A stretch of DNA of 64,000 nt from Macrostomum lignano (GCA_002269645.1 NIVC01001564.1:1-64000); one strand, 5' to 3'. Counted from the first letter of the stretch, positions 1 through 57,400 are shown. Numbers and translations are program-made. The notes: generated by a model from the letters alone, not told the origin.

Positions 1-2400
1 CCAGGTCGTCGGCATAGCCCAGCAGCGACAGTCTCTTCTCTGGATGGTGGCTGCTCGTGCGCTGCAAGCATGAAGCCGTCGGCGTCGGATGGAAGCGCAG
101 TCCGCAGCACCCAGTCGAGGACCAGCACGAACAAGAAGGGCGCTAGCGTGTCGCCCTGCAGCACTCCAGATGTTGTACTGAATGGTCCGACAGCCCGTCG
201 GGCGTCACCACGGCGGCTTGAGTGTCCTGGTAGAGCGCCATGACTGCGCTGACCAGGCGCTGGGGCACGTGGTAAGCCCGGAGCACCGGCACAAGGGCGC
301 CGCGCGCCACCGAGTCGAACGCTTTCTGAAGTCAACGAAGACACAGATCAGCGTCGCCTGGCGGGTGCGCGCCTCCTCGATTGTCCTCCTGAGGCAAGGA
401 TCTGGGTCGCTGTGCCCCGGTGTGGCCGGAAGCCGTTTGCTCGTGCCGCAGAAACGGGTCCAGCACCGGTTGCAGCCGCGTCAGCAGGATCTTGTTGAAG
501 AGCTTCGCGGCGCAAGACATCAGCGAGATGCCCCTATGTTCTTCTTTCCGAGTTGTGCGGGCTTCTTTGGGATGGGGATCATGTGGGCCGTCGTCCACTC
601 AGTTGGGGCTGCACCCCGTCAAGTACGCGCGTTCATCACCCGGCGACCGCACGGGCCACCGGCAGGACTCGCAGCGCCTCGACAGGGATCTCATCCGGGC
701 CGGCCGCTTTTCCACAGGGACTTCTTCGCCTGCAGCACCACCTCGTCAGAGTAATGGGCTGACGTCGAAATCCTCCTGCCTTGGCAGGGCCACTTCCGGC
801 GGCAGCGGCATCTCCGCCTGCAGCACGGCGGCGGCGCGTTCACGATGGCGCCGAAAAAAGTCCCGCAGCTCGTTCCGGCGGGCCTCCGCCGTGTCGCCGG
901 GGAGGTTGAGGCTCGTGCGGCTCTTCTCCCGGTCAGCGCGTTCACAGCGCTCCACACGGCGCGGCTTGCCGTCGTGCCCTGCCGTTGTCACCGTCCTGAT
1001 GGTCTTTCTACGGCGGCCTGTTGTCCTTGCTCATAGGCGGCTGCGAGGGCCGCCTCGGCTTCGTCCACCTCCGCAGTCCTGCCCGCCCGTCGCAGCTGCT
1101 CAAGCCTCAGCTCGCACTTTGCACTTCCGGGTCCACCTCCCAGACCGGCCGACCTTTCTGCAGGGGCTTCACCAACTAGGGTCCACTCCGCAGCAGATTG
1201 GACGGCCGTGCAGATCTCGGGGTAGTCGGCTTCCTTCTTGCCGTCGAGGGCATCCACAAACGCGCGGGCGAAGTGAACCTGGGTCGCATCGTCACGCAGA
1301 GCCCGGAAGAAGTGCTTCGGCTTCCGCTTGGGCGGCCGTAGAGCGGGTCCTTCAGCTTGATGTCGCAGAAGAGCAGCTTGTGGTCGGACTTCGGCGCCAA
1401 TGGCAAGATGGTATCGCAGTTGGTCACACGGCCACGCTCTCGAAAGTGCAGCAGCACGTGGTCCAGCTGCCAGCCTCGTCGTGGCATTCGGCGCGGTTGT
1501 TGTTGCGCCGCGGCCGCTTGCAGCCGGCAAAGGTTGCCAGCCGCTGCTCGGGTTTCCGGAACCACGTGTTCATCGACACCATGTCATGCCGAGCCACGAA
1601 GTCGGTCAGCGCCTCGGTGTTGGCATTCTCGCGCGGGTCACGAAGGGGGCCCGGTCTGACCTGCGCATGACAGCGTTCAGATCACCGAGCACGATCACCG
1701 TGTCCCGTTGTGCCACAGCCTCCACCTGCCCGGACAAGAACTCGAAAAAGACACGAGCTTCATCGGGGTGGGCAGCTGTCGGCGCGTAGGCGCAGAAAAT
1801 GTGGGCGCTCCGACTCCTCAGCCGCAGGTCGATCCGCAGCAGCCGAGGGGACAGGCTCTGGCAGCACACACTCTGTTGCAGCTTTGGCCCGACCAGCACT
1901 CCTACTCCTCCATGACCTCTCTCGTCCGCTGATGTGTACAGGAGGCTCCAGCCAGCTCCCAGCTCTTCACGCTGGAGGCCGGGGCCGGCCACGATAGACA
2001 CCTCCTGCAGAGCCACCAGGTCCATCTTCGTCTCCTGAGCCAGCTTTGCCAGCAGGCCTGGCGCCAGTTCTCCTTGAGGGTCCGGCAGTTCCAGGTTGCC
2101 AGCCAAAGGGGGTGCTCTGGTACGGCTGGGGCCCGATGCTGTTGGGGCCTCGTGGTCCCGGCGCCACCCGGAGGATCCAGGGCCTCGGCCTCCCGCCTGC
2201 CTGCGCGCTTTGCTGCTTGGGCACGACTGCGCCGGTTGCGCTCTCTGCGCCGCTGGGTGGGCGGGCAGCACTGCGCTGGCCGCGGGGGTCTTGGCCTTGC
2301 CGCTGTTGGCTGCCGCAGCTTGAGGGCGCGGCACTCCGAGCCAACCTTGGCTATGCTCCGGGGCGATGCTCTGCCCAGGGGTGCCAGGAGGTCGCGGCAT
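1..2400 (-). mobile_element. Non-LTR retrotransposon (LINE, RTE-like, single APE endonuclease + reverse transcriptase ORF); runs off the left window edge; frameshifted as assembled
   Basis: Minus-strand APE motifs LATWNCRTL, MDLVALQEV, VIVLGDLNA, QLDHVL and SDHKLL. RT motifs GISLMSCAAKLFNKILL, FVDFRKAFDSV, GVLQGDTLAPFLF and GYADDL (at about 2-20). Pieces lie in different frames, separated by single-base losses. Confidence 0.95.
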
Positions 2401-39680: not shown

Positions 39681-42600
39681 GCTGAGAGAGCCGGCCTTTA
39701 TGACCAAGCAGGAAGGAAACGAAGAGCCGCTATGACCAAATGCCATGACCAATATCAGAATATCATGTTCGATCGCAGAGATTGATCTTACTGTATGAAA
39801 AAATACATGTAGTGCCCGCTTCATACAAGCCTGCTGTCCTCTGAAAAAGCAAAGAAATATATAAATATAATGTGTATGTAAATTACAGTACATTTACTGT
39901 GTGATTATGAATGTATGAAATCGATGGGTCGGAAATCTGATCAAGATCTTACACGCATGGGAAAATTTAAGCCGGATCGAGATGTAGAGAAAATCTAATT
40001 ATTTTTCATTGTTATATTAAATACACTGATACAAAGTTTAGTGAAAAAGTTTAGTTGCAGCGAAAAGAGTTTTTGTGTTGATTGATAATATCAAAATCGA
40101 TCCGGTTCGGATTTCAACATGCATGCCTACTGCATGTACGACCTACATGATCGTGCCCGCATGTAATTGAAATGCGAAAATACAAATGAATTCGCTGTGT
40201 ACAGTACATGTACATTATGTGTATTGAATTACATGTTGATCATGATACTTGTTGCAAGCTAGAATACTACATTTGTATAAGCAAATCATAGCGACTTTTT
40301 GTTTATGTAGACACTGTGGTACATGTATGTGTAAATTTAAATTATTTTTACATGTGCATGTATAATTCTCATAGTCAACTCACATTTCACGTTAATATCT
40401 GTTAGTGCGATATCGCAATATCTACAAACTATCACTATGTCATTAAAAATTGCTACGTCATGTGTACATGTGTATCTGTATGTAATGTATGTGATGTCTA
40501 TGTAAGGTACATGTGTATTTTTGCACGGACTTGCACGGACTACTACACACTATGTAATTTTAAATGGCTTTTGGGTTCTCACGTTCTGTTGTGGAATTTC
40601 TACACCATTCTTATTATTATACTAACCTGAGTGAGCTATATTCAATATAATTTACCTCTGAACTTCTGATCAAAATTGGAGCCAAGAAAAGATTGTAACA
40701 TCAGCAAATGGGTTCATGTACATGTACGTAGGTATGATGTTCAGCGTTTACTAACTAATTGTATAAATGAAATTCTGTGTCTCTGAAGGCTTTTTACAAT
40801 AAACATACATAATTTTTATAAAAATATTATTGTTTTAACTTCATTTTTCCCAACAGAAAACTCGGAAACATTTGTTAATCTTGCTGCACAATTGCATCAA
40901 TTGAAACGAAGGGGTCTCCCTAAAACACGCCCCGCACCGCCCCAGCAGCGCTACACGTTATAACAATTTGGTTTGTAAGACTTTGCAAAATAAGTTTTAT
41001 GCTAAGATAAAAATTTTAATTAAATGCATTTATTTTATTAGAAGTAGAAAATCCTAAGTTTAAAGAATTTTTAGCAGAAAGCGCACTAGACTTGTCAACA
41101 GGTATTCAACTTTACCGTGTTACATTAGTTTGTTGAATCGTGAATAGAAAATAACACGTGCTTATATAATACGTTGAATCTAATACACTTATACACGGTC
41201 ATTTTGTTAGGAGCTCCACTCATGATGAAGCTCTCTGAATATCTAAGCTAACGCCAACGGTAAAGTAATTACATTAAGACAATTCTAAACTAACCAACAA
41301 GCAATATACACGCTTCAAGTATCTAACCAAAGAACTAGAAAACCAACAAGTCCAGGTAAGCTACTTTAGTCATCTAGCGTAGCAAAGCGAAAGTAAAGCC
41401 GTAGGCCCCCACAACAGTGTCAATAACTTAATGTATCTTTGGTTCTCTTTCAACAAGAAATACCGTCTGCCTGCTGAGTAAACGAAGTGGTTGTAACTAC
41501 ATTTCATCTGCTATTTAATAGCATAACTTGGTTAGCCTAGCCCTAGGTCTAGGTTATAGCCAAAATTTCACTCGAATGTTGTTACAAGCCTTTTTTTAAT
41601 TTAGCGGCAGATTTTGCATCTTTAACGCCCCCAAATTTTCTGGAATTTTTTTCACCTACACTTGCACTTTTTTACTCTGAATCTCTGATGTTATTTTTTA
41701 TTATTTCTCCTGCATTTGATTTATATTTAATGTCTAATGCATTATTCGATTGTATATAGTATTGATTATAGTTGGCTCATTTCATTTTTCAGACACTAAA
41801 CATAAATAATTAATTCAACAATATGCCAGTAATAAAGTACATTTTTATGATAGTAACAAATTAAAACAGCATATTTTTTCAAAGTCTATATTAACCAATA
41901 TAATTAGATGGCTTAGAAAAAATACACAGTAAGCAAAATAGCACATATTCCAGATTGAAAAAAGGACAAGTTCTAATAACAGGGAACACAAAAATTAAAA
42001 AGTAACAGGGATATATTAGAATTTAACATTTCAAGAGAACAAAAAAGTGCTTTTCAAAAATGTTATAACAGAAAAAGTTGTAACAGTGCCATTTACTTAA
42101 AAACAAGAAAAAACATTATTAAACTAAAAGACTATTTACACTTAATTAGATCTTACTCTTTTAAATTTGGAAAAAAGGCAAAAATGTTCAAAGTTGCAAA
42201 AAATATTGTTTTTTTATTCTCAAATAGACAAGTAGGCAAAATAGGCAAAATGGATTCTCAATAGACAAAATAGAAAAAAGTAACAAATAGTAACATCTGA
42301 TGCATAAAGTGCCATTTTATATGAAATTTTTCTTGCTATATTGAAAGTAAAATAAATGTTGGCATTATAGCAATGAAGTAAGTTGAACACTTAATAATAT
42401 AAATAACTTTAAGCATACAAACAGAAAAGGTTTAGACATAAAAAGTTTAAGTAAATACATAGCCATTTTCTTATCAGCAAACAATTTAATAATAATATGA
42501 TGATTAGCTATAAATGAAAACCTCTAAACTATGATCTCATTGCCATTACCATTATGACATGGTTGTGCATTGTGCACTCTTGGAATTCACTGTCCTTAAC

Positions 42601-43049
42601 ATTTTCATGCAAACAGACAGTTCAAAAGCACTCAGGTCCCAATACCTGACTCAGCACCCCTATCTAGCCTATCTATTCTCCATACTCATGAACATTATCA
42701 TGTACTCAATGTACCAAAATCTGTTTCATCAGTCAATAAATAGGCACTGCCACATGCTTTTTTCACCTTAGTGAAACAAACTTACCAAGAAACAGGAATA
42801 CAAACACAAGCTCATTGCTATACTATATACTACAAGCTATTTTTCTTTTAATCTATTTCACAGATTCACACAACTCTTTATTCAAAGTCCACTTCTTGCA
42901 GGGCTTTTTATGAAATGTAAATGCCCATTTGAAAATAATCATCAGTACTCTGCTATATATAATAAACGAGCTATGCTAGAAATTAGCTAAATTATTATTA
43001 CCACAGGACGAAAATACAACAGTTTCGTAGCTTCAGAGTTGATAGAAAA

Positions 43050-46000
43050 TTAACCTTTCGGCTGACGTTTGTATATAACTAGTCGAGCATCTGACGAAAT
43101 ATTTTTCAGCAAAGACGTAGAAGTGCTTAGCTCTGTGGTCATTAGATCGTCCAGCAAGTAGCATATGTCACCTTTTGATGGAAATACATAAGCGACGTAA
43201 TGACCTTCGTCGACTCGTTCTCCCAGGTGCACAATCACACTTTGGAGGCAATAGCGCTGATTGTTATAGTCAATTTCTGGCGTTAAATCGAAGCCCACTC
43301 GGTTCTTGACAATAGTTGCCTGGCTTCTCAAGAGCCTGTTCACGACGAAGCACAGGAGAGGTGGCGCATTTTGAGGAGTTCTGCTATGAACGCAGCTACT
43401 TGTCTGACAGGCTGTGCATGTGATGTCATCAGACTCGTCCGGTCGTAGTGCCGCATTCACAAGCTGAATCAGCTGCTGTCCTTCAACTGGTTGAACCACC
43501 ACGAATGTTTCATGCAAACTTTCAGTAGTCGCGGCATTATTGCACCGGAGACATAGGGTGGACCCGCCGAGCTAAAATAATAAAGCCAAACAGCTGAGAC
43601 GGAATTGAAAACATCGATTTAAAGTGCCTGTACTCTCTTACTGCCATCTATGCTGTACGTGTCCGATCCTGGATTCATATTTGTTTACATGTATTTGCCT
43701 CTTTTTACTACATTAGTTCCCTATGATATTGTCGTTTCAAATGGTTTCCGTTCAAAAAGTAAAGCAAGTTTCTGTACTCGTAAGTGCTTTTTGAAATTTA
43801 GAAACGAGAAGTATTACCTGAATTCTAAACTGGCGACGAATAGTCTGCAGCTTTTGAGAAATGAGCACGAAAAATTCAAAGCAGTCGTTATATTCGTTGG
43901 TATTTATTTGACCAGCCGTACAGCATTCTTCCAATGCAGTGTTGTACAAATATTCGCTGAATCCAGATCCGCTCGAAATGTTGGCCAAGAGTCGTATAAG
44001 AAAGGACGAATTCACGGCTGTTTCAGAAAAATTTCTCCCTGACAATGCCGCACCAACTGCGTGAAGACTGGCGTTGAACCAACAGAGTTTTCCATTACGA
44101 TTGGGTAGGCCGAATGGACGATAGCCTGATGTCGATAGCGCCGAAGCTTCGACAGTAACAAAACTGGCGACATGATCAGAACAATCAACAAAAGCATGAG
44201 CGGCTGGCTCGTTTATCACTGTTGGCAGTGGCGGATCTAGGATTTTATTTAAGGTGGGCGGTCCAAGTTTGTGGCGCAACATGAGTATGAGGGGCGCCAA
44301 TTTTTAAGCTAGGGGCGCAAAAAATGCGTGTAGGGGGCGAAAAATCAAGTTTAAAGGGCACAAACTTAGGTTTTTTGGGGGGGGGCAATATGTTTCATCC
44401 AGCTGTTTCGGGGGGGGGCAGTCGCTCCCCCCGCCCCCCCCCCCCTAAATCCGCCCCTGACTGTTGGTATTCGTGGAAACTCACCATTGCTACGGTTAGC
44501 AGACTCACAAGTTATAGATTCATGTGCACGTTCATGACGCCAAAGCTTATTTTGTTCGATGCGTTCCTCTCGAGAAAATCCTTTGCGTCGACGTCCCTTA
44601 TTCGATCGAGAAGCTTTTAAGATTTTGCCGATTCCTACAGGCTTCTCGGCAACTCGGGGCAATCCAATTTTTCGTCTAACCGCTGCGATATGCGAACACG
44701 ATTGAGCAGAGACACAAGAACACGAAGCAACGCCGTTGCTAAATGTCACAACATTATTTCGTCCGGCAACGTTAGTCACTATGAAGTTACCAAGAGTAGG
44801 GTTGAATGAAACTTTATGTTGCTCACTAAGCAAGCTGATCCGTGTCGACTGTTCGTTGTCGTCTAGATCGACATTAACTCGCACAGATTTGTGGCTAGAT
44901 TCTCCAACGGGCTGGTGAACAGGAGTACCAGTAGCATCATTGGACAATGAAGGCCCCGTGCCACCTGACTCATTGCTGTTGCTATCATAGAAACTCATGT
45001 TGGGACGTATGACAGTCACTTTAATCGCACCAATTTCTCGAATTTCTCGAGTCGCTGAAGTCTGAGAGTGCCGGCGTTGAATGTTCGCAGCTATTTGTTC
45101 TAACGACAACGATGGAGAGAGTGTTACAGTTTCGGGCGACTGTTGTAGATGTTGGAACTCCGGCTTTAGTGTGTAGTTTCCTTGGCCACACAAACCACGA
45201 AGAATTTCGTTCCTGTAGTATCGAGAAGTTTGGTAAAGTCCGACAATGCAGTCATCGATCGTTGCATCCTTGAAGTTAAGCACACGCTTGAGCATTGCGT
45301 TTATTGATTCTGATTGGTTCTGAGTTACACCGGTAACTGGGCAGTAGTGCGATTGTAGAATCCACTTTGCAAAAAATTTAGGGATTAATGGGTGAATTTG
45401 ATTGTCAAAATAAGCGGCAAAACTTGGATTCCAGTTTTTTTTGCAGCTTGCATACTGGGCATTGTACTGCTCGATGCTGTCTGTTTCTAGCAGGGAGAGT
45501 AGATCTGCTGAAATCATGTCTTCATCAGCCGATGTTCCACCGTTCTTGCGAATCCAGAACCGGACGTCCCGCTTCAGATGGTTCCAGCATCCCAAAAATC
45601 GGATATTGGGGAAGACAGAAGCCATCGAATTTCTCAGCCCAATTTCTCCATCCATAACGCATGCCACATTAGTAGTTGCCAATGCAGGAAGCGAGGATTT
45701 CACTTCTTGCCACAAAAGTTTGTGGCGAGCCTCGAGCTTTCGATGGTGAATGAGAAAAAAGGCTGGGCAAACCGGATTGTTAATGAAAATTGGTAATCGA
45801 ATTACAAGAGGTGAGACTAGTGCTCTTGTCATCTCAAATCCAGTATCATACGACAATAGCTGATTCCTATCGTCCAACAATAAAATGCGATTTAGCAAGT
45901 CCAGAAGCTCAGGACAGCCAGCTGGAATAGCTAAGTCAGGAAACGTCTGGATTGTACGAATGAATCCTGGTAGTTCATTGGCAAGAATGTGAATGTTCAT

Positions 46001-47980
46001 AATTTCGTCTTTTGAAAGCATATTTGGCATAGAGCTCTTAAGGTTCTCGACTTGCTTTAGATTCCGAGGATTACGCACTGGGTTGCTGCTCTGACCTAGA
46101 TAAAGTCGATATGCTTGCGAAGGAGCAAGGGTCGAAAGTTCGGCTCGAAGATTGCCGAGCACCGATGGGCTAGTCCGCATAAAAGTTCCACAGTGCTTGC
46201 GGTTTCCGTGATACACCATGTTAGCAGGTGGTTGCACTGATGGATTTCCGATATAGTGGATCAGTGTCTTGCTGAAATAAGAACATTAGAAGCAGTTAGT
46301 ATATTAAACTGTCAAAAACAGGATGCTACACCCGATTTTATTCAACATTTTATAATTTATATTTACCTTGAATCTTTAGAGCCATTAGAATTGATTAATT
46401 GATACGCTTGTCTGATGAACAAGCGGGACATTTGTCCAGAGGTGTCTCTGGACAAATAGCGGTACTTATATAGAGTTGGACGTATTCTAAAAAGTTATTA
46501 TTAATTTTGTCAAAAATTATAATTTGCTAGATTAAATTCGAAAGCGCAAGGTTTTATATTGTATATATGTAGCTGTAGCATTTTATAAAAAAAAACATAA
46601 TATTGTTCTTAAAGAACATACCAGAAACAACTTGTTTGGTGTTATAAGCATATCTTATGGCTATGTCAATGTGTTAATGGATTTATGCATATTTCAATAA
46701 GTTGATTCTAAAAATAATTTTTATATATTATTTTTGGAGACAAAATGCCAATTATTTTAACAAAACTTTTATACTTTTGGATGGAAAAAACGTTTTGTAT
46801 GAATTTATATGAGGAATTTGTTTATAAATTATATTCTTATTTTATTTAAATTAGTTCATGTACTACACTAAAGCCTATAACCTATATTATCTAAAATAAT
46901 TTTGACTTTGCTAATAATCTAGCCCCACTCTAATACAAGCTTATTTGCATAAAAACATTCAGAACAGTCAAAATCAATAGCTTTAATTGTGGCAGCAAGA
47001 ATGTACACAACTGGCAACACCAATGCAGCCACACTGGAAACCACCCAACCTTATCTAGCTGGGGTGGGGTGGTGCATACCAAGCTAGTCGGCTTGCTAAG
47101 TCGGGGCAGGAGGGGGTTGGCAAAGCCTATCATGCCACACCACCTTTTTGTACCTCCCTAGGCCCCTCAATCTTGTGCTTTTAGTAATTTTACAAATATA
47201 CATACAGAGAAGCACAAACTCTTCACTGCCATTTTATCTATTGAAATAAAAAGACCTTTTGTCTCCAGCTATTGTATACCAACATCATGCACAGGCCTTA
47301 ACAATTAATCTTATTATCATTTACAAGAGACTATTTTGTAGGAGCTAAAATTAGTTTTATAACTTATCAAAGCCTATATTAACACAATCAATTTTAAGAC
47401 TTTTAATGAAGTATTTATGGGTTAACCAATATTAATATTAAAAAGAAAGATTGTGTCAATATTTAAAATATTTATTCAAAAAAGAAAATATAATGCAATG
47501 CTAGTAATAAGACATTTACTAATAAAAAATCTGAAAATATCCAGTTTTATTGACATTAAGCAGCAAGAAATAATGTTTCTATGATCTATCTAGATCATTG
47601 GAAGCAGAACCTTGTCACAGGTATACAGAATTTACCTATTTACTAAAATTCTACATTTAATTTTACATTACATTTTATATTTAATATATAAGATACAGCA
47701 AACAAATGCTGTATAACCTAATAGAAACTGTTTCAGTACCATTTGAAATAGTGCTTTTAGACCTATTGTGTCTGGATGATCAGAATTTTTACCTCGGCAG
47801 TCGGTCTCGTCCTCCGTCTTTCCATAAATAGCCATCCGCCTTCCAGTCATCTGACTCGGACGTCGATTTAGGTTTATACAGATAAAGGGACTCTGTGGGT
47901 CTATATACAGGTGAGTCGATAACACAGGCTTGGGAGGAGTGCTCTTTTAATAGCTTTAAAGCAATAGCTGTCGATAGCAT
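43050..47980 (-). CDS. MULE transposase-SWIM-USP (peptidase C19-like) fusion, predicted ~1005 aa. Exons 47980-47793, 46486-46367, 46271-44485, 44218-43818, 43571-43050
   Basis: All junctions are GT-AG and phase-consistent (total 3018 nt). MULE triad SYDTGF / VMDGE / NQSESIN plus CWNH. SWIM CSCVSAQSCSH. USP Cys box GLPNRNGKLCWFNASLHAV, NDCFEFF box, CLRC...CTAC zinc pair, His box YCLQSVIVHLGERVDEGHYVAYV and YLLDD. Confidence 0.85.
44226..44459. mobile_element. 234-bp hAT-type MITE nested in the transposase-USP linker
   Basis: TIRs cagtggcggatctagg / cctaaatccgcccctg. Exact 8-bp TSD actgttgg at 44218-44225 and 44460-44467. Confidence 0.92.
46989..47260 (+). repeat. Dispersed repeat copy 2 (CpG-decayed), nested in transposase intron 1
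   Basis: Colinear with 16064-16340. Confidence 0.8.
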
Positions 47981-48429
47981 TTAAAACTTTATTAAGAATA
48001 ATTCATTTCTTGCAATAAAATAAAAATTAAGCTGCTTGACACGCAAGTTGCTGGCATGCACGTGCAGCCCCCATACGATAAATTTAAATGATGGTAAGTA
48101 TCAATGTTCGCTCTGATTAAAAAATGTATATATATATATAAAATTATTAAAATAGTTATTATTTTACACTAACATCAATCAGTTTTCTCAGCAATCAAAC
48201 ACTGCATTGACAAAAACGTTATAATGTGTAGCGCTGCTGGGGCGGTGCGGGGCGTGTTTTAGGGAGACCCAAACGAAGAATGTTTGACTTGCAAATTTCT
48301 GCATGCTTTTACATTTTTAAACTTATAGCCCTCTTAATGTCGTTGGTTTTTGTTGCTGTCTTATAAAAATAGAAGTAGCATACTTGAATAGAATTTACTG
48401 CCTGCTTTGATTGCATTAAACCTATCACT

Positions 48430-51400
48430 ATGTCATCGATCGATGACTTGATTCGCGAGTTGTCACGAAGTTTTGAACTTCTTTCGGATGGCGAGGCCAC
48501 GAGGTTCCAGCGAAAAAAGTCTTTAGAAACAATTTGGACAAAATCGAAGGAACACTTTAGCAGCCTCGCATCTGATCGCGACGCTCAACAAGAACAGACG
48601 CAGCAATTTCTATCGTATTCTACAAAGTTTTTGGCCAGTAGCTTCTCAGACCAGACGGAGTTGATCCGGGAGAAATCCATTGATATTGTGACCTACTTTG
48701 TACAGAATACTGAAGAACTTCCACAAGCAGTGTGCACCACCATTGTAAACATTCTCGTTGGCCGTCTGGGCCAGAATCAGAAAGATGTTGTCGAGCCATC
48801 CGAGGAACTTCGGCTGAAGATGTCAATCTTACTTGATGCACTAATCAACAAGCTGCAGAAGAATTCGCACCTGTACTTGTCAGAATTTACCCAGGTGATT
48901 GTCCAGATTCTTGACGACGCCTTTCACGAGGTTAAAAAGCAAGCTTGCAACACACTAAGTAACCTGGCTAAGCTGACTGAAGGCTATTTTCACCCATTCA
49001 CGGAGAAATTCATTAAGCCCTTGCTACATAATATTGCTCATCAGCATTCAAGAGTGAGAAAGGATGTCATCAGAACCGTTGGTGATGTCATCCAGTATGG
49101 ATCTGGAAAGCATGTTGATGATGTGCTCAGTCATTTGGCTCAAAGATTATTTGATGATTCACCCTTGGTTCGAGAAGAAGTCATTAATGTTGTTGGTACA
49201 TGGCTTTTAGATTTGCCTGATCGCTATTCATTTTTCCATAAGTTGATCCCTTTGCTTCTAACTGGACTTTCTGATGAGATTCCATCAATTGTGGAAAAGT
49301 CTGAGGCTTTTTGGAATGATATTGGTAAGTTTTTCAATTAGAATATTATTAACTAACTTATTTTATGTTTTCTTTTTAAGAATTATCTTAAATAGGCCCC
49401 TATATGAAAAATATTATGTTGTTGTATAATAGAAGATTTGCACAAGTTTATTATATTGCCAAAAATATAACTTTTTATCATATTTATATGAAATACCTAT
49501 TTTTTTGTTTCTTGGCTTATTGATTACTTGGCGCATGACCAAGACCGCCACACACCAAGACCGCCACAGCTTTTACTGGCTACTGGAATTGAGGGGGAGC
49601 TACTAATCTTCCAGCATTGCTATTGGTTGTGATGGGTTGTGGAGTTAGATGAGGAGGAAGCGTCCCAAGATTGGTCACGAATAAGTGGCCCAAAACAATT
49701 GCAAGTCAACCAGGCAATTTTAACAATATCTTTAACAAACCACAATTTGTTACTTTTAGCAGTAGATGAGCATGAATAATGCTTTTGAGAGCAAAAGCTT
49801 GAGTAATTAGATTTAACTTCACTTTCAAAAAAGCGCCTCTCAAAATGCAATTGCAGGTTGCTGTAATTTGAAAAGTTTTTTACGAGCTCGCACATTCGTA
49901 TATTCGGCGTCTGGGTGCGTAGTGCATTACGGACAAACAAATCTAAGTGTCTTGATATGTGCTATGGTATGTGGATTTAGAGGTGTCATTCATTTTGACG
50001 AAGGTTTACATGTATTTTGACGAAAGCAAGTTAACAACTATCGTTCACTCACATAACAGAAAAAGCGCATCTTAGGCCCAATGCCTATGATATGTTACAT
50101 GTCTGGAAATGTACGAGCACGAGCACTGTGTGTATTTCATTGTGTACTCAAAGCCGGGAATTTCGGAGAAAGCAAAGGGAGGGGATGAGAGTAAATTTAC
50201 ATGCACATGTAATGAGAGAATATATAGAGAGGGGTTAAGAGATCTCGATCTCTCTCACTCTCACTCTCTCTGTCTCACTCATTTCACACCCACTCCCACA
50301 CTGACACACTCTCTTACTCACTCACTCACTCACTCACTCACTCACTCTCTCACTTTTAATTCACTTCTGAATTTCAGGCACTATAATAAATTACAGAATT
50401 TTTCACACATTTGATCTTTTGCCTCCGATTTTTAAATGCAAATATCCTTTACTCTCGCGCACTGCGGCAACTTTGCACAGGTACAGTGTGAGCTACATGT
50501 ACATGCATTTTTCAAAGGGTACTGATCGATAAATACTGATTTTGACAATTCTGACATCTCTTCAAAATATACCAAACTTCTTGATACATTTAATGTAATA
50601 AATGTAATACAGAGATGCACGTATGTGCATATGAGTGCAAGGTACATGTACATGTACACGTTTTCCAATCTATCTGTGACGTTTTTTCTAGCCGATCAGG
50701 AATTATCAATAGCAGTCAAATTTTTGCAGCTGAAATCACATTCAGCGTTATGCAAAAAGGAAATATTTGCGAAATCAAAAAGCCGTTTTTAAAGCACTGC
50801 AAACTGTGGTCTGAGCCTTGCCGCTCGCAAATAAGTATTGCGGTGTGATGCGCTCCATTTATATTTCGGGAGTCCATGCGGTGGAGATGCTTGAATTAGG
50901 TGAAAAATATGCAAACTTGAAGATATCAGTGGATAGGGCAGATCGAAGGGAGATTTGCAAACAAATTGTTAGAAAACAATGGTTGCATACTTTTGCTAAA
51001 TGCTTGCATTCATCTGTTAGTACAGTTGTAGCTAGTATTGGACATGCGAAATATGCAAAATACCATAAGATCGGACCAATGGCACAATCATTTTTTATTT
51101 TAGATAGACTTCTTTTAGTCCCATCAAAGTTTGCATGTACTTCTGAGGTCATGACCTCATGCTCATGCTGTACTTGGCAGATCCAGGTTTTCGCTCCAGG
51201 GACCTCGCTTGGTTGCACTATTACACATGGGAACACCAACTGCAATATAGATGCCACGCCCACATACGCTCGTATGTTGCTCAGAATTTAATTGAATTTA
51301 ATCTGATCACACTATATTGAATACCCGCAGCTATTTTGAAATATTTGATAGCTATATCTCTAACGCCGGCCCCTCGTAAAAAATCCGTTACTATCCAAAT

Positions 51401-54400: not shown

Positions 54401-57400
54401 GTGAATGGGATTGAGAACAACATTAACTATTATATCAGCCCTTAGCTTCCAAGACTCAGAAAAGCCAAAGCCGAAAACCGGCCGACACTTGCTTAAAATT
54501 CAAAAAGGGCACTTGATGGATCATGCTAAAAAGTGGGGGGGGGCTCCAGCCCCCCGTGACCCCTGGTTCCGACCACCCCTGACCTCGAGAGATGATTTCC
54601 TGATCCAATTTAGCTGTACAGAGCATGGATATACATGTATCTATCACACAATGCGCATACTGTGTACCAGGTCGATCATTGCCAATTGATTGCATGGTAA
54701 ATTAAAATCAAGTGTAGCGATATGACTGTCCGTCTGTTGTATGGTAGGGATCAGAACTGCATGTTACATGCACGAGTATACACTGGTAGCCAATGTGATG
54801 TACAGTACAAATGTACAATTGTAGCTAATATTCGTTTAAATAGTTTTAGAACGTATTTTTTAATAAACAGGGAGAACATCCGAAATCAAAGTAAACGATT
54901 ACTGTACATGTGATGTGCATGCATTTTCGTGCCATACATTTTGATTGTATTAAGAGCGATTAGAGTAACTTTTGAGTGAGTGATCAGTGTGCAAGTGAGT
55001 GAGTGAGCGAGTAAGATACATGTAGAGGGTGAGAGAGTGAGTGAGTTAGTGATTGAGTGATTTAAAGTGAGCATGAAAGCTGCTTATAACAGGCCTCGTA
55101 CAACTCGATCAAGGCCCAGCTCGTACAAATCACGGACTACTTTAGTGTCGTTTTTATAGGAAGCCTGTACATGTACACGTAATAAAAACGGTATGGCTGC
55201 ACGACTCACCATCCCGTAACCTCTAAATACAAGTGCATGTTAGCCTGCCTGCCTGCGATCGAATTGGCAAATTTGCATTGGCAATCGGACATGCTCGAAT
55301 CACACATGAAAACTCACATTATAACAAATTATAACAATGATAACCAACTCAAGGACCACATTCGAAACTGCGAATTAAGAATGCAGTTAAGTCAAGAGCC
55401 TTTTTTCACAGCTTTCTACTAATAGTAGCTGTTTATTTAGGATTGATAGTTCCTTTACAATTCAAATTGAATGAAAAAACGAGGAAGGCTCACTCAGGTC
55501 CGCCCGGCCCGCTCACCGGTTCCTCTCTCGCGGCCTTGTCGTCCCCATCTCACCCCTCCCCCAGCACCATCCAATAACATGGCGAGCCAAATTCCTCCCC
55601 CTAGCTCCCCCAAGTGTGGCAGTCTTGGTGTGTGGCGGTCTTGGTCCTACACCGATTACTTATATGTTTGATCTTTTTATTTTACCTAGCTTATATAAAG
55701 AATAAATTGATATACTTTTGGTATTACTTTAATATATAATATATTTATGTAAAGATTTTAAAATAAAACTTTTTTATATATATCTATAGTGTTTATTTAA
55801 TATATTTATTGCATTATATATATTTATGCTTACTTTAATTTATAATTATATATTTTATAGTTTTTAGTTTGAATGAATTTGATTCTTGTATTGTTTTTGT
55901 TGGTCTAGGCCTATTAAAAATTCTTATATTTTTTTTACTAAAGCCTTGGTTAACGATCATCAAAAGTTCAATAATTAAAATGCTAGAATTGAACTATAAA
56001 ACCTATCTATATTACTAATTTAAAAAAAAATTTTAACTATGCTTCTAAGTATAAAAGTAATATTAACTATACTTTTCTATCCTGTTAGGTTGATCTATCA
56101 AAATTAGAATAAATCAGTCATCTTAATTTTATATAGGATATAAAATTGTCTATTATATAAATATACTACTCTTCTTACTACTAACCAGGTGCCAAGTTTG
56201 AGGCTGAGAATGAAGAGGACCTAAAAGACAAGCAGGACTTTGCTACCTTGTGTCCAGAACACTACCCAGTGCCACCAGCTAAGCGACCAAATCTTGGCTG
56301 CAGAACTTTGGTGAATCGCAATCTCTCGAAGGTTGGTAATTACAAGCATAATTAGAAAATCGGCAATCTGCTTTACAACAGAGTTTTAACTTGGGGTTGA
56401 AATAAGTAATGTAGAAAATAAAGGACTTCAGCTGTAATCTACAGAGCTGGTTGAAAACTATACCTCACATTCTAAGTTAGAAGGGGCAAAAAACAACTTT
56501 CAAGATTGTCATAGGGGGGGGGGGGCAGAAAACCAGCTTCCACGATTGTCAGAGGGGGCGGAAAACCAGCTTTCACGATTGTTAGAGGGGGCGGACAACC
56601 AGCTTTCACGATTGTCAGCGGGGCGGACAACCAGGTTCCACGATTGTCAGAGGGGGCGGACAACCAGCTTCACAATTTTCAGAGGGGGTGGAAAACCAGG
56701 TTCCATAATTGTCAGGGCGGAAAACCAGCTTCCACGATTATCAGAGGGGGCGGACAACCAGCTTTCACGATTGTCAGAGGGGGCGGAAAACCAGGTTCCA
56801 CAATTGTCAGAGGGGGGCAAAAAACCAGCTTCCACGATTGTCAGAGGGGGCGGAAAACTAAGCAGTCAGCGCGCTGCCCCCGCCCGCAGATCCTGCCGCC
56901 CCTATCCCGCGACCTCACCGACTGGGTGGCCTCCACCCGGCTGAAGTCCGCCCAGCTGCTGCCGCACCTGATCCTGGCGGCCGAGTCCTACACGACGCAG
57001 CACCTGGAGACGCTGCTCACCGCCGCCTATCGCGCCGCAGCTGACGACGAGGCCGGCGTTCGCCGCGGCGTCGACCAGGCAATCTTCTACGCCAGCCACT
57101 TCGCCGAGCCGTCGCTCTGGTGGCGCCTCGTCGGGCCGCACGTCAAGCGGTCCGCGGACGGCAACCGGCAGCTCGCCAGCGCCCTCCGCGTGCTGACTCG
57201 CCTGCTGGCCGGTGCTGAGCCACGCCTGGCCCGGCCGCTGCTGCCCGAGGTGGCCGCCGCTCTGGCCGCCAGCGATGTCGCCTGCGGCGCCTACGGCTTG
57301 GATACTAAATGGCGCCTGTTGAAGTGCTTGGATAGTCTTGTTGGAGTGTGCAACTCTGCGGCGGTTAGTGACTGCGGTTTCATGGGCCTTTTCACCCGTT

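What the first reader, a model, noticed from the sequence alone, without database searches (positions are those of the whole stretch)
40912..48270. Apparently intact Mutator-like transposon whose transposase is fused to a USP/C19 deubiquitinase domain
Seen: 45-nt identical TIRs, an exact 8-bp TSD (aaacgaag) and a 5-exon minus-strand model of 3018 nt with no internal stop. The model carries the MULE D-D-E triad (YDTGF, MDGE, QSESIN), CWNH and a SWIM finger. It then continues into a USP-type Cys box (GLPNRNGKLCWFNA), a zinc pair (CLRC/CTAC), a His box (GERVDEGHYVAY) and the Asp (YLLDD). Established: MULEs are known to carry ULP1/C48 SUMO proteases. A C19 ubiquitin-specific protease in the same polypeptide as the transposase is not something I recognise as described. 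Inference: a young or active element that may protect its transposase from ubiquitin-dependent degradation, or strip chromatin ubiquitin marks (H2Aub/H2Bub) to resist silencing.
Basis: partly seen in the sequence, partly recalled or inferred. Interest (0 to 1): 0.92.

Follow-up and report, generated by a model that had tools for sequence, protein, structure and literature searches.

The report
Mutator-like transposon with a deubiquitinase domain
This is a real 7.4-kb Mutator-like DNA transposon whose transposase reading frame runs straight into a complete ubiquitin-specific-protease (USP) domain, a pairing I could not find described for this superfamily, but in this copy a small nested transposon interrupts the frame between the two parts.

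Summary
The 45-nt identical TIRs (61 nt at 93%), the 8-bp TSD AAACGAAG and the 3,018-nt GT-AG model without stops are all present. The C-terminal 300 aa is a genuine USP/C19 domain. It scores 42.6 bits on Pfam UCH against a cut-off of 23.9. Its AlphaFold model (pLDDT 87.6) matches USP30, USP18, USP12 and USP21 at E~1e-20. The Cys, His and Asp residues and both CxxC zinc pairs are conserved. The transposase belongs to a divergent MULE family: 22 of 24 members hit PF10551, and one relative carries ULP1 in the same C-terminal position.

One correction matters. Removing it leaves one uninterrupted exon from the transposase into the USP Cys box. So the fusion is ancestral and does not depend on a splice model. 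This copy, however, is interrupted. Unspliced, it encodes a complete transposase that lacks the USP.

No MULE+USP architecture turned up among 23 relatives, 150 USP relatives, 18 related loci or the literature. UCH domains are already reported in Helitron-like elements. I rate it a new variant of a known kind, seen in a single copy, with function untested.

The parts
40904..40911 (.). Left target-site duplication, AAACGAAG
   Evidence: Identical 8-mer abutting both TIR ends.
40912..40972 (+). Left terminal inverted repeat (outer 45 nt identical to the right TIR)
   Evidence: the repeat finder pair I1, 61 nt at 93%. The 45-mer occurs exactly twice in the window, with 0 expected. Alignment.
40973..43049 (-). 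About 2.1 kb of AT-rich (GC 0.30) non-coding 3' region of the element. It has no ORF of note.
43050..43571 (-). Last coding exon, the C-terminal two thirds of the USP domain. It holds both zinc CxxC pairs (43553-43542, 43418-43407), the His box with the catalytic His (43202-43200), the DD motif (43151-43146) and the stop codon at 43052-43050.
   Evidence: The Pfam UCH match spans the exon junction.
43572..43817 (-). Genuine GT-AG intron inside the USP domain (246 nt, GC 0.35)
   Evidence: Read-through gives a stop. The spliced product aligns continuously to UCH and folds with pLDDT >90 across the junction.
43818..44225 (-). Linker plus the N-terminal third of the USP domain, with the Cys box (44111-44070) and catalytic Cys (44084-44082). 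Ancestrally this was the 3' part of the large transposase exon.
44226..44459 (.). Nested 234-bp MITE of hAT-like appearance (16-nt TIRs, 14/16 matching, GC 0.55). Its 8-bp TSD ACTGTTGG lies at 44218-44225 and 44460-44467. The MITE interrupts the transposase-USP reading frame.
   Evidence: The TIR pattern occurs only at these two places in the window, with 0.05 expected.
44468..46271 (-). Main transposase exon. It carries the DDE triad (D245 at 45847-45845, D310 at 45652-45650, E424 at 45310-45308), CWNH (45589-45578), a SWIM-like CxCx5CxH (44722-44690) and a basic NLS-like stretch (44599-44579).
   Evidence: Fold search of the modelled core: best hit is ISCth4 transposase.
46272..46366 (-). 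Intron 2 (95 nt, GT-AG)
   Evidence: The junction is supported by continuous alignment to the relatives P0001, P0003 and P0005.
46367..46486 (-). Exon 2, part of the N-terminal DNA-binding region
46487..47792 (-). Intron 1 (1,306 nt). It contains a ~290-bp dispersed repeat at 46972-47257.
47793..47980 (-). Exon 1, with the start codon at 47980 and the motif DDWKADGYLWKDGG (47851-47810) of the family's N-terminal CG-1-like/WRKY-like DNA-binding region
   Evidence: CG-1 E=0.068; relative P0173 passes the CG-1 cut-off.
48210..48270 (-). Right terminal inverted repeat
48271..48278 (.). Right target-site duplication, AAACGAAG

Best explanation
Shown: positions 40912-48270 hold one copy of a cut-and-paste DNA transposon of the Mutator/MULE superfamily. 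It has 61-nt TIRs and an 8-bp TSD, and it sits about 150 bp upstream of the start codon of a DNAAF5 gene.

Its single gene (minus strand, ancestrally four exons, 1,013 codons) encodes these parts in order:
- an N-terminal CG-1/WRKY-like DNA-binding region;
- a DDE catalytic core with CWNH and NQSESxN signatures;
- a SWIM-like CxCx5CxH finger;
- a basic NLS-like stretch;
- after a disordered linker of roughly 70 residues, a complete USP/C19 cysteine-protease domain in the same exon and frame.

The USP domain has its catalytic Cys, His and Asp and both zinc-ribbon CxxC pairs. It occupies the same C-terminal position as the ULP1/C48 domain of a relative (P0005).

In this copy a 234-bp MITE has inserted into the linker. 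Unspliced, the gene gives a full transposase lacking the USP domain. The fusion protein is made only if a fortuitous GT(44484)...AG(44219) pair is used to splice the MITE out, at the cost of 8 linker residues.

Inferred: the USP domain is a tethered deconjugating enzyme for ubiquitin or a ubiquitin-like modifier, brought to the transposase or transpososome. By analogy with ULP1 in MULEs and with OTU/UCH in Helitron-like elements, it would reverse host modification of the transposase itself or of chromatin and repair factors at the element. That would favour transposase stability or access. I put about 0.85 on the anatomy and about 0.35 on this function; the single confidence value given here (0.7) weights the anatomy more heavily. 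Which modifier it cleaves is open, because the nearest folds include USP18 (ISG15) and USP36 (Fubi) as well as ubiquitin-specific enzymes.
For: - **TIR, TSD and model:**
- **MITE and restored ORF:** excising the MITE plus one TSD copy restores a continuous 3,042-nt ORF with no internal stop.
- **USP domain by sequence:** Pfam UCH scores 42.6 bits against a cut-off of 23.9, E=7e-11. There are 164 USP relatives at E<=1e-3 in 1.84 billion representative proteins.
- **USP domain by fold:** the AlphaFold2 model has pLDDT 87.6 and pTM 0.85. Foldseek top hits are USP30, USP18, USP35, USP12 and USP21 at E 5e-20 to 1e-17, TM about 0.74.
- **USP catalytic residues:** the columns for C46, H258, D275/D276, C141, C144, C186 and C189 are conserved.
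- **Transposase family:** 23 relatives at 28-39% identity and E down to 1e-82. 22 of 24 family members match PF10551, and several exceed its cut-off. All 44 invariant family columns, including the DDE triad, CWNH and CxC..CxH, are kept in the window protein. The best structural hit is the ISCth4 'Mutator family transposase' at E=1.6e-5.
- **Same C-terminal position in a relative:** P0005 has MULE at 300-395, SWIM at 612-642 and Peptidase_C48 at 806-904.
- **Composition:** GC3 is similar in the transposase (0.42) and USP (0.445) parts, against about 0.29 in the non-coding parts.
Against: - Only one copy is available, so mobility, copy number and selection on the USP part are untested.
- No transcript evidence is available.
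- The window protein itself is below Pfam's cut-offs for MULE (15.5 bits against 27.6) and Transposase_mut (17-18 bits against 21). Membership rests on transitive homology.
- The USP domain has unusual features: a one-residue insertion (R41) in the Cys-box loop, K instead of the usual N two residues before the Cys, Y for the conserved Q of the QQD motif, and C for the conserved W before the DD motif. It could be a weak or inactive enzyme.
- None of 23 relatives or 18 related loci carries a USP. It could be a one-off acquisition.
- This copy is interrupted by the MITE.
Confidence: 0.7

Rival explanations
1. Transduplication without function. The USP part is a host USP gene fragment picked up by one MULE lineage or copy in the Pack-MULE manner. 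It happens to be in frame but contributes nothing to transposition.
For: MULEs are known for acquiring host fragments (PMC6446971; PMC2528002). The USP part contains an intron (43572-43817), as expected of a genomic-DNA capture. No relative of the transposase carries a USP. The USP has several atypical residues.
Against: The whole catalytic domain is present, not a fragment. It is in frame with no stop over 924 nt, and the catalytic triad and all four zinc cysteines are intact. Identity to any of 1.84 billion representative proteins is at most about 33%, so it is not a recent copy of a sampled gene. Its codon composition matches the transposase. A relative has a different Ubl protease at the same position, which argues for a functional slot.
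Confidence: 0.15
2. The MITE is efficiently spliced out through GT(44484)/AG(44219), so this copy still makes a 1,005-aa transposase-USP fusion and is autonomous.
For: The donor is a consensus G|GTGAGT. The acceptor CAG| is supplied by the MITE's target duplication. The spliced frame is open and removes only 8 residues from a linker that the model predicts to be disordered.
Against: The donor and acceptor did not form an intron before the insertion, because they were 17 nt apart. The acceptor has a poor polypyrimidine tract. No transcript data are available. The unspliced frame terminates at 44366.
Confidence: 0.3
3. Gene-model artefact. The USP exons belong to a separate gene or transcript inside the element, a second ORF like mudrB, and are joined to the transposase only in silico.
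For: Many MULEs carry a second ORF (PMC6446971). A diatom MULE carries a separate E3-ligase ORF (bioRxiv 10.1101/2023.01.02.522487).
Against: After MITE excision there is no stop codon and no intron between the transposase and the Cys box: they form one exon. No ATG-initiated ORF starts the USP part on its own.
Confidence: 0.05
4. A domesticated host gene (transposase-derived protein with a USP domain) rather than a transposon.
For: Only a single copy is seen in 64 kb. The coding capacity is conserved.
Against: Perfect 45-nt TIR ends and a perfect 8-bp TSD flank the unit. It sits in the promoter-proximal region of an unrelated gene. It contains nested repeats.
Confidence: 0.03

Closest known systems
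ULP1-carrying MULEs (KI-MULEs/Kaonashi of plants; van Leeuwen et al. 2007 as cited in PMC2528002) and the animal-type relative P0005 found here
   Same: A MULE transposase with a DDE core and SWIM finger is followed by a C-terminal cysteine protease that deconjugates a ubiquitin-like modifier. In P0005 the protease sits in the same position after the SWIM finger and basic stretch. P0005's transposase is homologous to the window's (E=1e-47).
   Different: The protease here is clan CA family C19 (USP fold), not clan CE family C48 (ULP1). No PF02902 match exists in the window protein. In plants ULP1 is often a separate or oppositely oriented region. Here it is one exon with the transposase.
Helitron-like elements (HLE2/Helentron) carrying a UCH domain (HELIANO, PMC11417382)
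   Same: A transposable element stably carries a Pfam UCH/USP domain next to its transposition protein. Two such proteins (P0076 with UCH+DUF6570+Helitron_like_N, and P0143 with PIF1+UCH) are among the window USP's detectable relatives.
   Different: The transposition machinery is entirely different: rolling-circle RepHel against a DDE cut-and-paste enzyme with TIRs and a TSD. The Helitron USPs are not the closest relatives (29% identity over 215 aa, library E about 1e-4, against 1e-13 for the best hits). Nothing indicates transfer between the two.
Diatom MULE with a UBR-type E3 ubiquitin ligase ORF (bioRxiv 10.1101/2023.01.02.522487)
   Same: A MULE with a SWIM-containing transposase carries a ubiquitin-system enzyme.
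   Different: The cargo there is a ligase, not a protease, and it is encoded as a separate ORF in a diatom-specific family.
Zisupton/KDZ elements (SWIM + Ulp1, 8-bp TSD; from my own knowledge of Bohne et al. 2012, which is not in the searchable library)
   Same: They have an 8-bp TSD and a large transposase with a SWIM finger and a Ubl protease.
   Different: No match to Pfam KDZ (PF18758) was found in the window protein or its relatives, whereas the family matches MULE. The protease is USP, not Ulp1.
Cellular USPs (USP30, USP18, USP12/46, USP21, USP2, Ubp8)
   Same: The same fold and catalytic architecture, including the zinc-binding fingers.
   Different: Only 14-20% identity to solved USPs, and at most about 33% to anything in the protein libraries. 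The domain is fused to a transposase and has atypical Cys-box and QQD residues.

Membership tests
Mutator/MULE superfamily of DNA transposons | Transposase homologous to the MURA/IS256-type DDE domain (Pfam PF10551 / PF00872) | tested here: met
   The direct hits are below the cut-offs: MULE 15.5 bits against 27.6, and Transposase_mut 17.3-18.2 bits against 21. The protein is nevertheless clearly homologous (E 1e-82 to 1e-47) to proteins that pass: P0001 34.6 bits, P0005 31.7, P0004 28.1. 22 of 24 family members hit PF10551. The PDB profile search and the fold search both give the ISCth4 'Mutator family transposase' as best hit, at E=0.024 and E=1.6e-5 with TM only 0.30-0.35.
Mutator/MULE superfamily of DNA transposons | Catalytic D, D, E with a C/DxxH motif after the second D and an NxxESxN-type E motif | tested here: met
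   D245, D310, CWNH 331-334 and E424 in NQSESIN are all invariant across the family alignment.
Mutator/MULE superfamily of DNA transposons | Terminal inverted repeats and a TSD of 8-11 bp (range as given in PMC6446971) | tested here: met
   61-nt TIRs with the outer 45 nt identical, and the 8-bp TSD AAACGAAG.
Mutator/MULE superfamily of DNA transposons | Multiple copies and evidence of mobility in the host genome | not testable with these tools
   Only this 64-kb window is available. There is no second copy in it. The TIR was not found in the prokaryotic or viral contig collections.
USP / peptidase C19 deubiquitinases | Match to the UCH (PF00443) profile above the curated threshold | tested here: met
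   42.6 bits against a cut-off of 23.9, E=7e-11, covering profile positions 82-249 of 254.
USP / peptidase C19 deubiquitinases | Cys box with the catalytic Cys, His box with the catalytic His, and the Asp/Asn of the triad | tested here: met
   C744, H956 and D973/D974 align to columns that are 52/55, 58/58 and 52-54/55 conserved among 57 USP relatives. Deviations are a 1-residue insertion in the Cys-box loop, N->K at position -2, Q->Y in the QQD motif, and W->C before DD.
USP / peptidase C19 deubiquitinases | USP fold (palm, thumb and fingers, with a zinc ribbon) | tested here: met
   AlphaFold2 gives pLDDT 87.6 and pTM 0.85. All 50 Foldseek hits listed are USP catalytic domains, at E down to 4.5e-20 and TM about 0.7. 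Both CxxC pairs are present.
USP / peptidase C19 deubiquitinases | Isopeptidase activity on ubiquitin or a ubiquitin-like modifier | not testable with these tools
   This needs a biochemical assay.
ULP1-carrying MULEs (KI-MULE type) | Peptidase_C48 (ULP1) domain in the element | tested here: not met
   No PF02902 hit at E<=1 in the window protein. It is present only in the relative P0005.
Helitron-like elements with UCH | Rep/helicase (Helitron_like_N, PIF1) transposition protein and no TIR or TSD | tested here: not met
   No such domains are in the model. The element has TIRs and a TSD.
Zisupton / KDZ superfamily | KDZ-type transposase (PF18758) | tested here: not met
   No PF18758 hit in the window protein or in any of the 24 family members.
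Pack-MULE (non-autonomous, gene-fragment carrier) | No transposase; the cargo consists of host gene fragments | tested here: not met
   A complete transposase ORF keeps all invariant family residues, and the cargo is a complete domain in the same frame.

The most novel reading that the evidence does not exclude
A lineage of animal MULEs has an enzymatically active USP deubiquitinase built into its transposase, in the position where relatives carry ULP1. The domain is needed for efficient transposition, either by protecting the transposase from ubiquitin-dependent turnover or by erasing a ubiquitin or Ubl mark at the donor or target chromatin. Together with ULP1 in MULEs, CACTA and Zisupton, and with OTU and UCH in Helitron-like elements, this would show that removal of Ub/Ubl conjugates is a convergent, general counter-defence of eukaryotic DNA transposons. 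The MITE-interrupted copy here would be a natural 'USP-less' allele for comparison.
Probability: 0.3. Interest if true: 0.72.

Novelty: new variant of a known kind. Interest (0 to 1): 0.55.

Why it matters
Transposons of several unrelated superfamilies repeatedly acquire proteases that strip ubiquitin-like modifiers, and nobody has shown what these do for the element. A MULE whose transposase is physically fused to a USP, with a relative that has ULP1 in the same position, is a clean natural domain swap. It suggests that the element needs deconjugation itself rather than one particular protease family. It also gives a compact, testable construct: transposase with and without the USP, and a Cys752Ala mutant. 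For annotation, it warns that USP-like gene models in invertebrate genomes can be transposon-borne, and that an 'intron' with canonical GT-AG ends may be a nested MITE.

Tried and rejected
- **Close relatives of the USP domain:** the word-indexed search of 5.8 billion proteins found none. Only the exhaustive HMMER search found relatives, all at or below about 33% identity.
- **MULE+USP among the USP relatives:** none of the 150 best USP relatives contains the transposase. The long ones are tandem USP arrays, Helitron proteins, or kinase and PHD fusions.
- **USP domains in transposase relatives:** no PF00443 appears in any of 23 relatives. No tblastn or HMM hit appears in 18 related loci, including two loci with 10-kb flanks on each side. 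The closest-looking relative, P0002, lies on a contig that ends 60 nt after its stop, so it is uninformative.
- **Literature:** eight searches for MULE or MuDR combined with USP, UCH or deubiquitinase gave no description of this architecture. Two MULE surveys mention no ubiquitin protease. Repbase and Dfam could not be queried.
- **Host identification:** Rfam found nothing in the window. The element's protein is absent from the protein collection. The TIR is absent from the prokaryotic and viral contig collections. The host remains unknown: an animal-like genome with DNAAF5 and a rhodopsin-type GPCR, rich in microsatellites.
- **Rejected: the MITE region as an ordinary intron.** It has its own TIRs and an exact TSD, its GC is 0.55 against 0.26-0.35 in the other introns, and excising it restores the frame.
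- **Rejected: Zisupton/KDZ and Helitron membership** (see the membership tests).

Full report
**1. The observation**

The region 40912-48270 is bounded by an inverted repeat with arms at 40912-40972 and 48210-48270 (61 nt, 93%). The outer 45 nt are identical and occur nowhere else in the 64-kb window; 0 matches are expected from shuffles. The octamer AAACGAAG lies directly outside both ends, at 40904-40911 and 48271-48278.

All junctions are GT-AG. The length is 3,018 nt, giving 1,005 codons with no internal stop.

**2. The C-terminal domain is a USP**

- Residues 699-1005 hit Pfam UCH (PF00443) at 42.6 bits, E=7e-11, above the curated cut-off of 23.9.
- The word-indexed protein search found nothing. 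An exhaustive HMMER pass over 1.84 billion representative proteins found 164 hits at E<=1e-3, and every one I checked is a UCH-domain protein.
- An AlphaFold2 model built with 57 of these relatives is confident: pLDDT 87.6, pTM 0.85, with only the first ~30 linker residues disordered.
- All 50 PDB fold matches listed are USP catalytic domains. The top ones are USP30, USP18, USP35, USP12, USP21, USP36, Ubp8 and USP2, at E down to 4.5e-20 and TM about 0.74.
- In the alignment, the catalytic Cys (C744), His (H956), the DD motif (973-974) and both zinc CxxC pairs fall in near-invariant columns.
- Four features are atypical: a one-residue insertion in the Cys-box loop, K for the usual N at position -2, Y for the conserved Q of the QQD motif, and C for the conserved W before DD.
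- Sequence identity to any other protein is at most about 33%. It is an orphan branch of the USP family.

**3. The transposase is a divergent MULE**

The window protein alone is sub-threshold on Pfam: MULE 15.5 bits and Transposase_mut 17-18 bits. Membership rests on its relatives and its structure.

- It has 23 clear relatives at E down to 1e-82 and 28-39% identity.
- 22 of 24 family members match PF10551, and several exceed the cut-off.
- The window protein keeps all 44 invariant family columns. These include D245, D310, CWNH, E424 in NQSESxN, and the CxCx5CxH finger, which scores as SWIM in relatives.
- A model of the core (pLDDT 79.5) has the IS256-family ISCth4 'Mutator family transposase' as its best PDB match. 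The E-value is 1.6e-5, though TM is only 0.30-0.35. The profile search of PDB sequences agrees.
- No KDZ/Zisupton or Helitron domains are present.
- With the TIRs and the 8-bp TSD, which is within the 8-11 bp MULE range (PMC6446971), I file it as a MULE.

**4. Correction to the gene model**

- It begins CAGTGGCGGATCTAGG and ends with the reverse complement of CAGGGGCGGATTTAGG. This TIR pattern occurs only at these two places in the window, with 0.05 expected.
- It is flanked by the exact 8-bp duplication ACTGTTGG at 44218-44225 and 44460-44467.
- Its GC content is 0.55, against 0.26-0.35 for the real introns.

Removing the MITE and one TSD copy joins 'exon 3' and 'exon 4' into one exon that reads ...ANRSNGEFPRIPTVINEPAAH... 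with no stop. The result is a four-exon, 3,042-nt, 1,013-codon gene.

Two consequences follow:
- The transposase-USP fusion does not depend on a predicted splice. In the ancestral element the SWIM/NLS region and the USP Cys box were in the same exon and frame.
- This particular copy is interrupted. Unspliced, the frame runs into the MITE and stops at 44366. That product would be a complete transposase (DDE, SWIM, basic stretch) without the USP.

It could remove the MITE at the cost of 8 linker residues. Whether it is used cannot be told without transcripts.

The other introns are supported by homology. Junctions 1 and 2 align continuously to ORF-encoded relatives. The intron inside the USP (43572-43817) is required for a continuous UCH alignment and a confident fold. 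Intron 1 carries a second nested repeat at 46972-47257, 78% identical to 16046-16336. So 'young or active' is not established.

**5. Is the architecture seen elsewhere?**

- Among the 23 transposase relatives, none has a UCH domain. One (P0005, 1,039 aa) has MULE 300-395, SWIM 612-642 and Peptidase_C48/ULP1 806-904, which places a different Ubl protease at the same C-terminal position.
- None of the 150 closest USP relatives contains the transposase.
- None of the 18 related loci has a USP by tblastn or HMM. That includes two relatives examined with 10-kb flanks on each side.
- Two USP relatives are Helitron proteins: P0076 (UCH+DUF6570+Helitron_like_N) and P0143 (PIF1+UCH). This matches the published finding that UCH is stably carried by HLE2 Helitron-like elements (PMC11417382). 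They are not the closest relatives of the window's domain.
- ULP1 in MULEs and CACTA elements is established (PMC2528002). A diatom MULE carries a UBR-type E3 ligase ORF.
- Eight literature searches and two MULE surveys gave no MULE+USP report.
- Repbase and Dfam could not be searched, and the protein libraries are poor in animal genomes. 'Not found' is therefore weaker than 'absent'.

**6. Mechanism**

Shown: the anatomy described above, and the intact catalytic and zinc residues.

Inferred: the USP is a cis-tethered deconjugating enzyme that acts on the transposase or on chromatin and repair proteins at the element. The inference rests on the fusion, on the relative with ULP1 in the same position, and on the recurrence of Ub/Ubl proteases in unrelated transposons. 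The substrate modifier is open, because the nearest folds include ISG15- and Fubi-specific USPs. The atypical Cys-box and QQD residues leave room for low activity or none.

The main rival is a non-functional transduplicated host fragment. It is disfavoured by the completeness of the domain, the shared frame and codon composition, and the deep divergence from any sampled USP. It cannot be excluded from a single copy.

**7. Context**

The element lies about 150 bp upstream of the ATG (48430) of a DNAAF5 gene; Pfam TPR_DNAAF5 scores E=7.5e-92, and a further exon lies near 56.9-57.4 kb. This promoter-proximal position fits what I know of MULE insertion preference. The host is not identified. The window also encodes a rhodopsin-type GPCR fragment and a LINE-type endonuclease fragment, and it is rich in micro- and minisatellites.

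**8. Verdict**

The finding is real and the fusion is genuine. The description 'intact' is wrong for this copy, and the novelty is narrower than claimed. It is a new accessory-domain variant (USP instead of ULP1) of a known kind of element, seen once, with function untested.

- Interest: 0.55.
- Anatomy confidence: about 0.85.
- Confidence in the functional inference: about 0.35.

Noticed in passing
window 44226-44459: A 234-bp G/C-run-rich MITE with 16-nt CAG...-type TIRs and an 8-bp TSD (hAT-like features) is nested in the element. Its family and other copies are unknown.
   Followed up: partly
window 46972-47257 and 16046-16336: A ~290-bp dispersed repeat (78% identical) has one copy inside intron 1 of the element and one 31 kb away. 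It is probably a SINE or MITE of the host and was not classified.
   Followed up: partly
window 47810-47980 (protein residues 8-55); relative P0173 residues 19-131: The N-terminal DNA-binding region of this MULE family resembles the CG-1 domain of CAMTA transcription factors. P0173 (Ptychodera flava) passes Pfam's CG-1 cut-off (26.9 bits against 23.5), a second family member also hits, and the window protein scores E=0.068. One literature search found no paper linking CG-1 to transposases, so a possible transposase origin or relative of the CG-1 domain may be worth a separate look.
   Followed up: partly
window 48430-49341 and about 56887-57363 (+ strand): These are exons of a DNAAF5 (dynein axonemal assembly factor 5) gene, with TPR_DNAAF5 at E=7.5e-92 and HEAT_DAAF5 at E=2e-32. 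The transposon sits about 150 bp upstream of its start codon and could affect its promoter.
   Followed up: partly
window 32819-34039 (- strand): An ORF with a rhodopsin-family 7TM match (PF00001, E=6e-17), probably one exon of a GPCR gene.
   Followed up: no
window 1-2400: A very GC-rich stretch (0.64-0.66) holds an ORF (1606-2400, - strand) matching the Exo_endo_phos endonuclease family (E=1.7e-7). It looks like the 5' part of a non-LTR retrotransposon.
   Followed up: no
window 22500-23800, 25400-27900, 29300-30450, 38400-39450: Long micro- and minisatellite arrays produce spurious long ORFs in several frames, with strong strand skews (GC skew up to +/-0.6). Between 38417 and 39435, two pairs of identically sized ORFs lie 523 bp apart, which suggests a ~523-bp tandem duplication.
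   Followed up: no
L016 13299-14258; P0005 residues 993-1037: PHD-finger-like matches (weak) appear downstream of, or at the C-terminus of, two transposase relatives. This hints that the family's C-terminal region carries varied chromatin-related modules (ULP1, PHD, USP).
   Followed up: no
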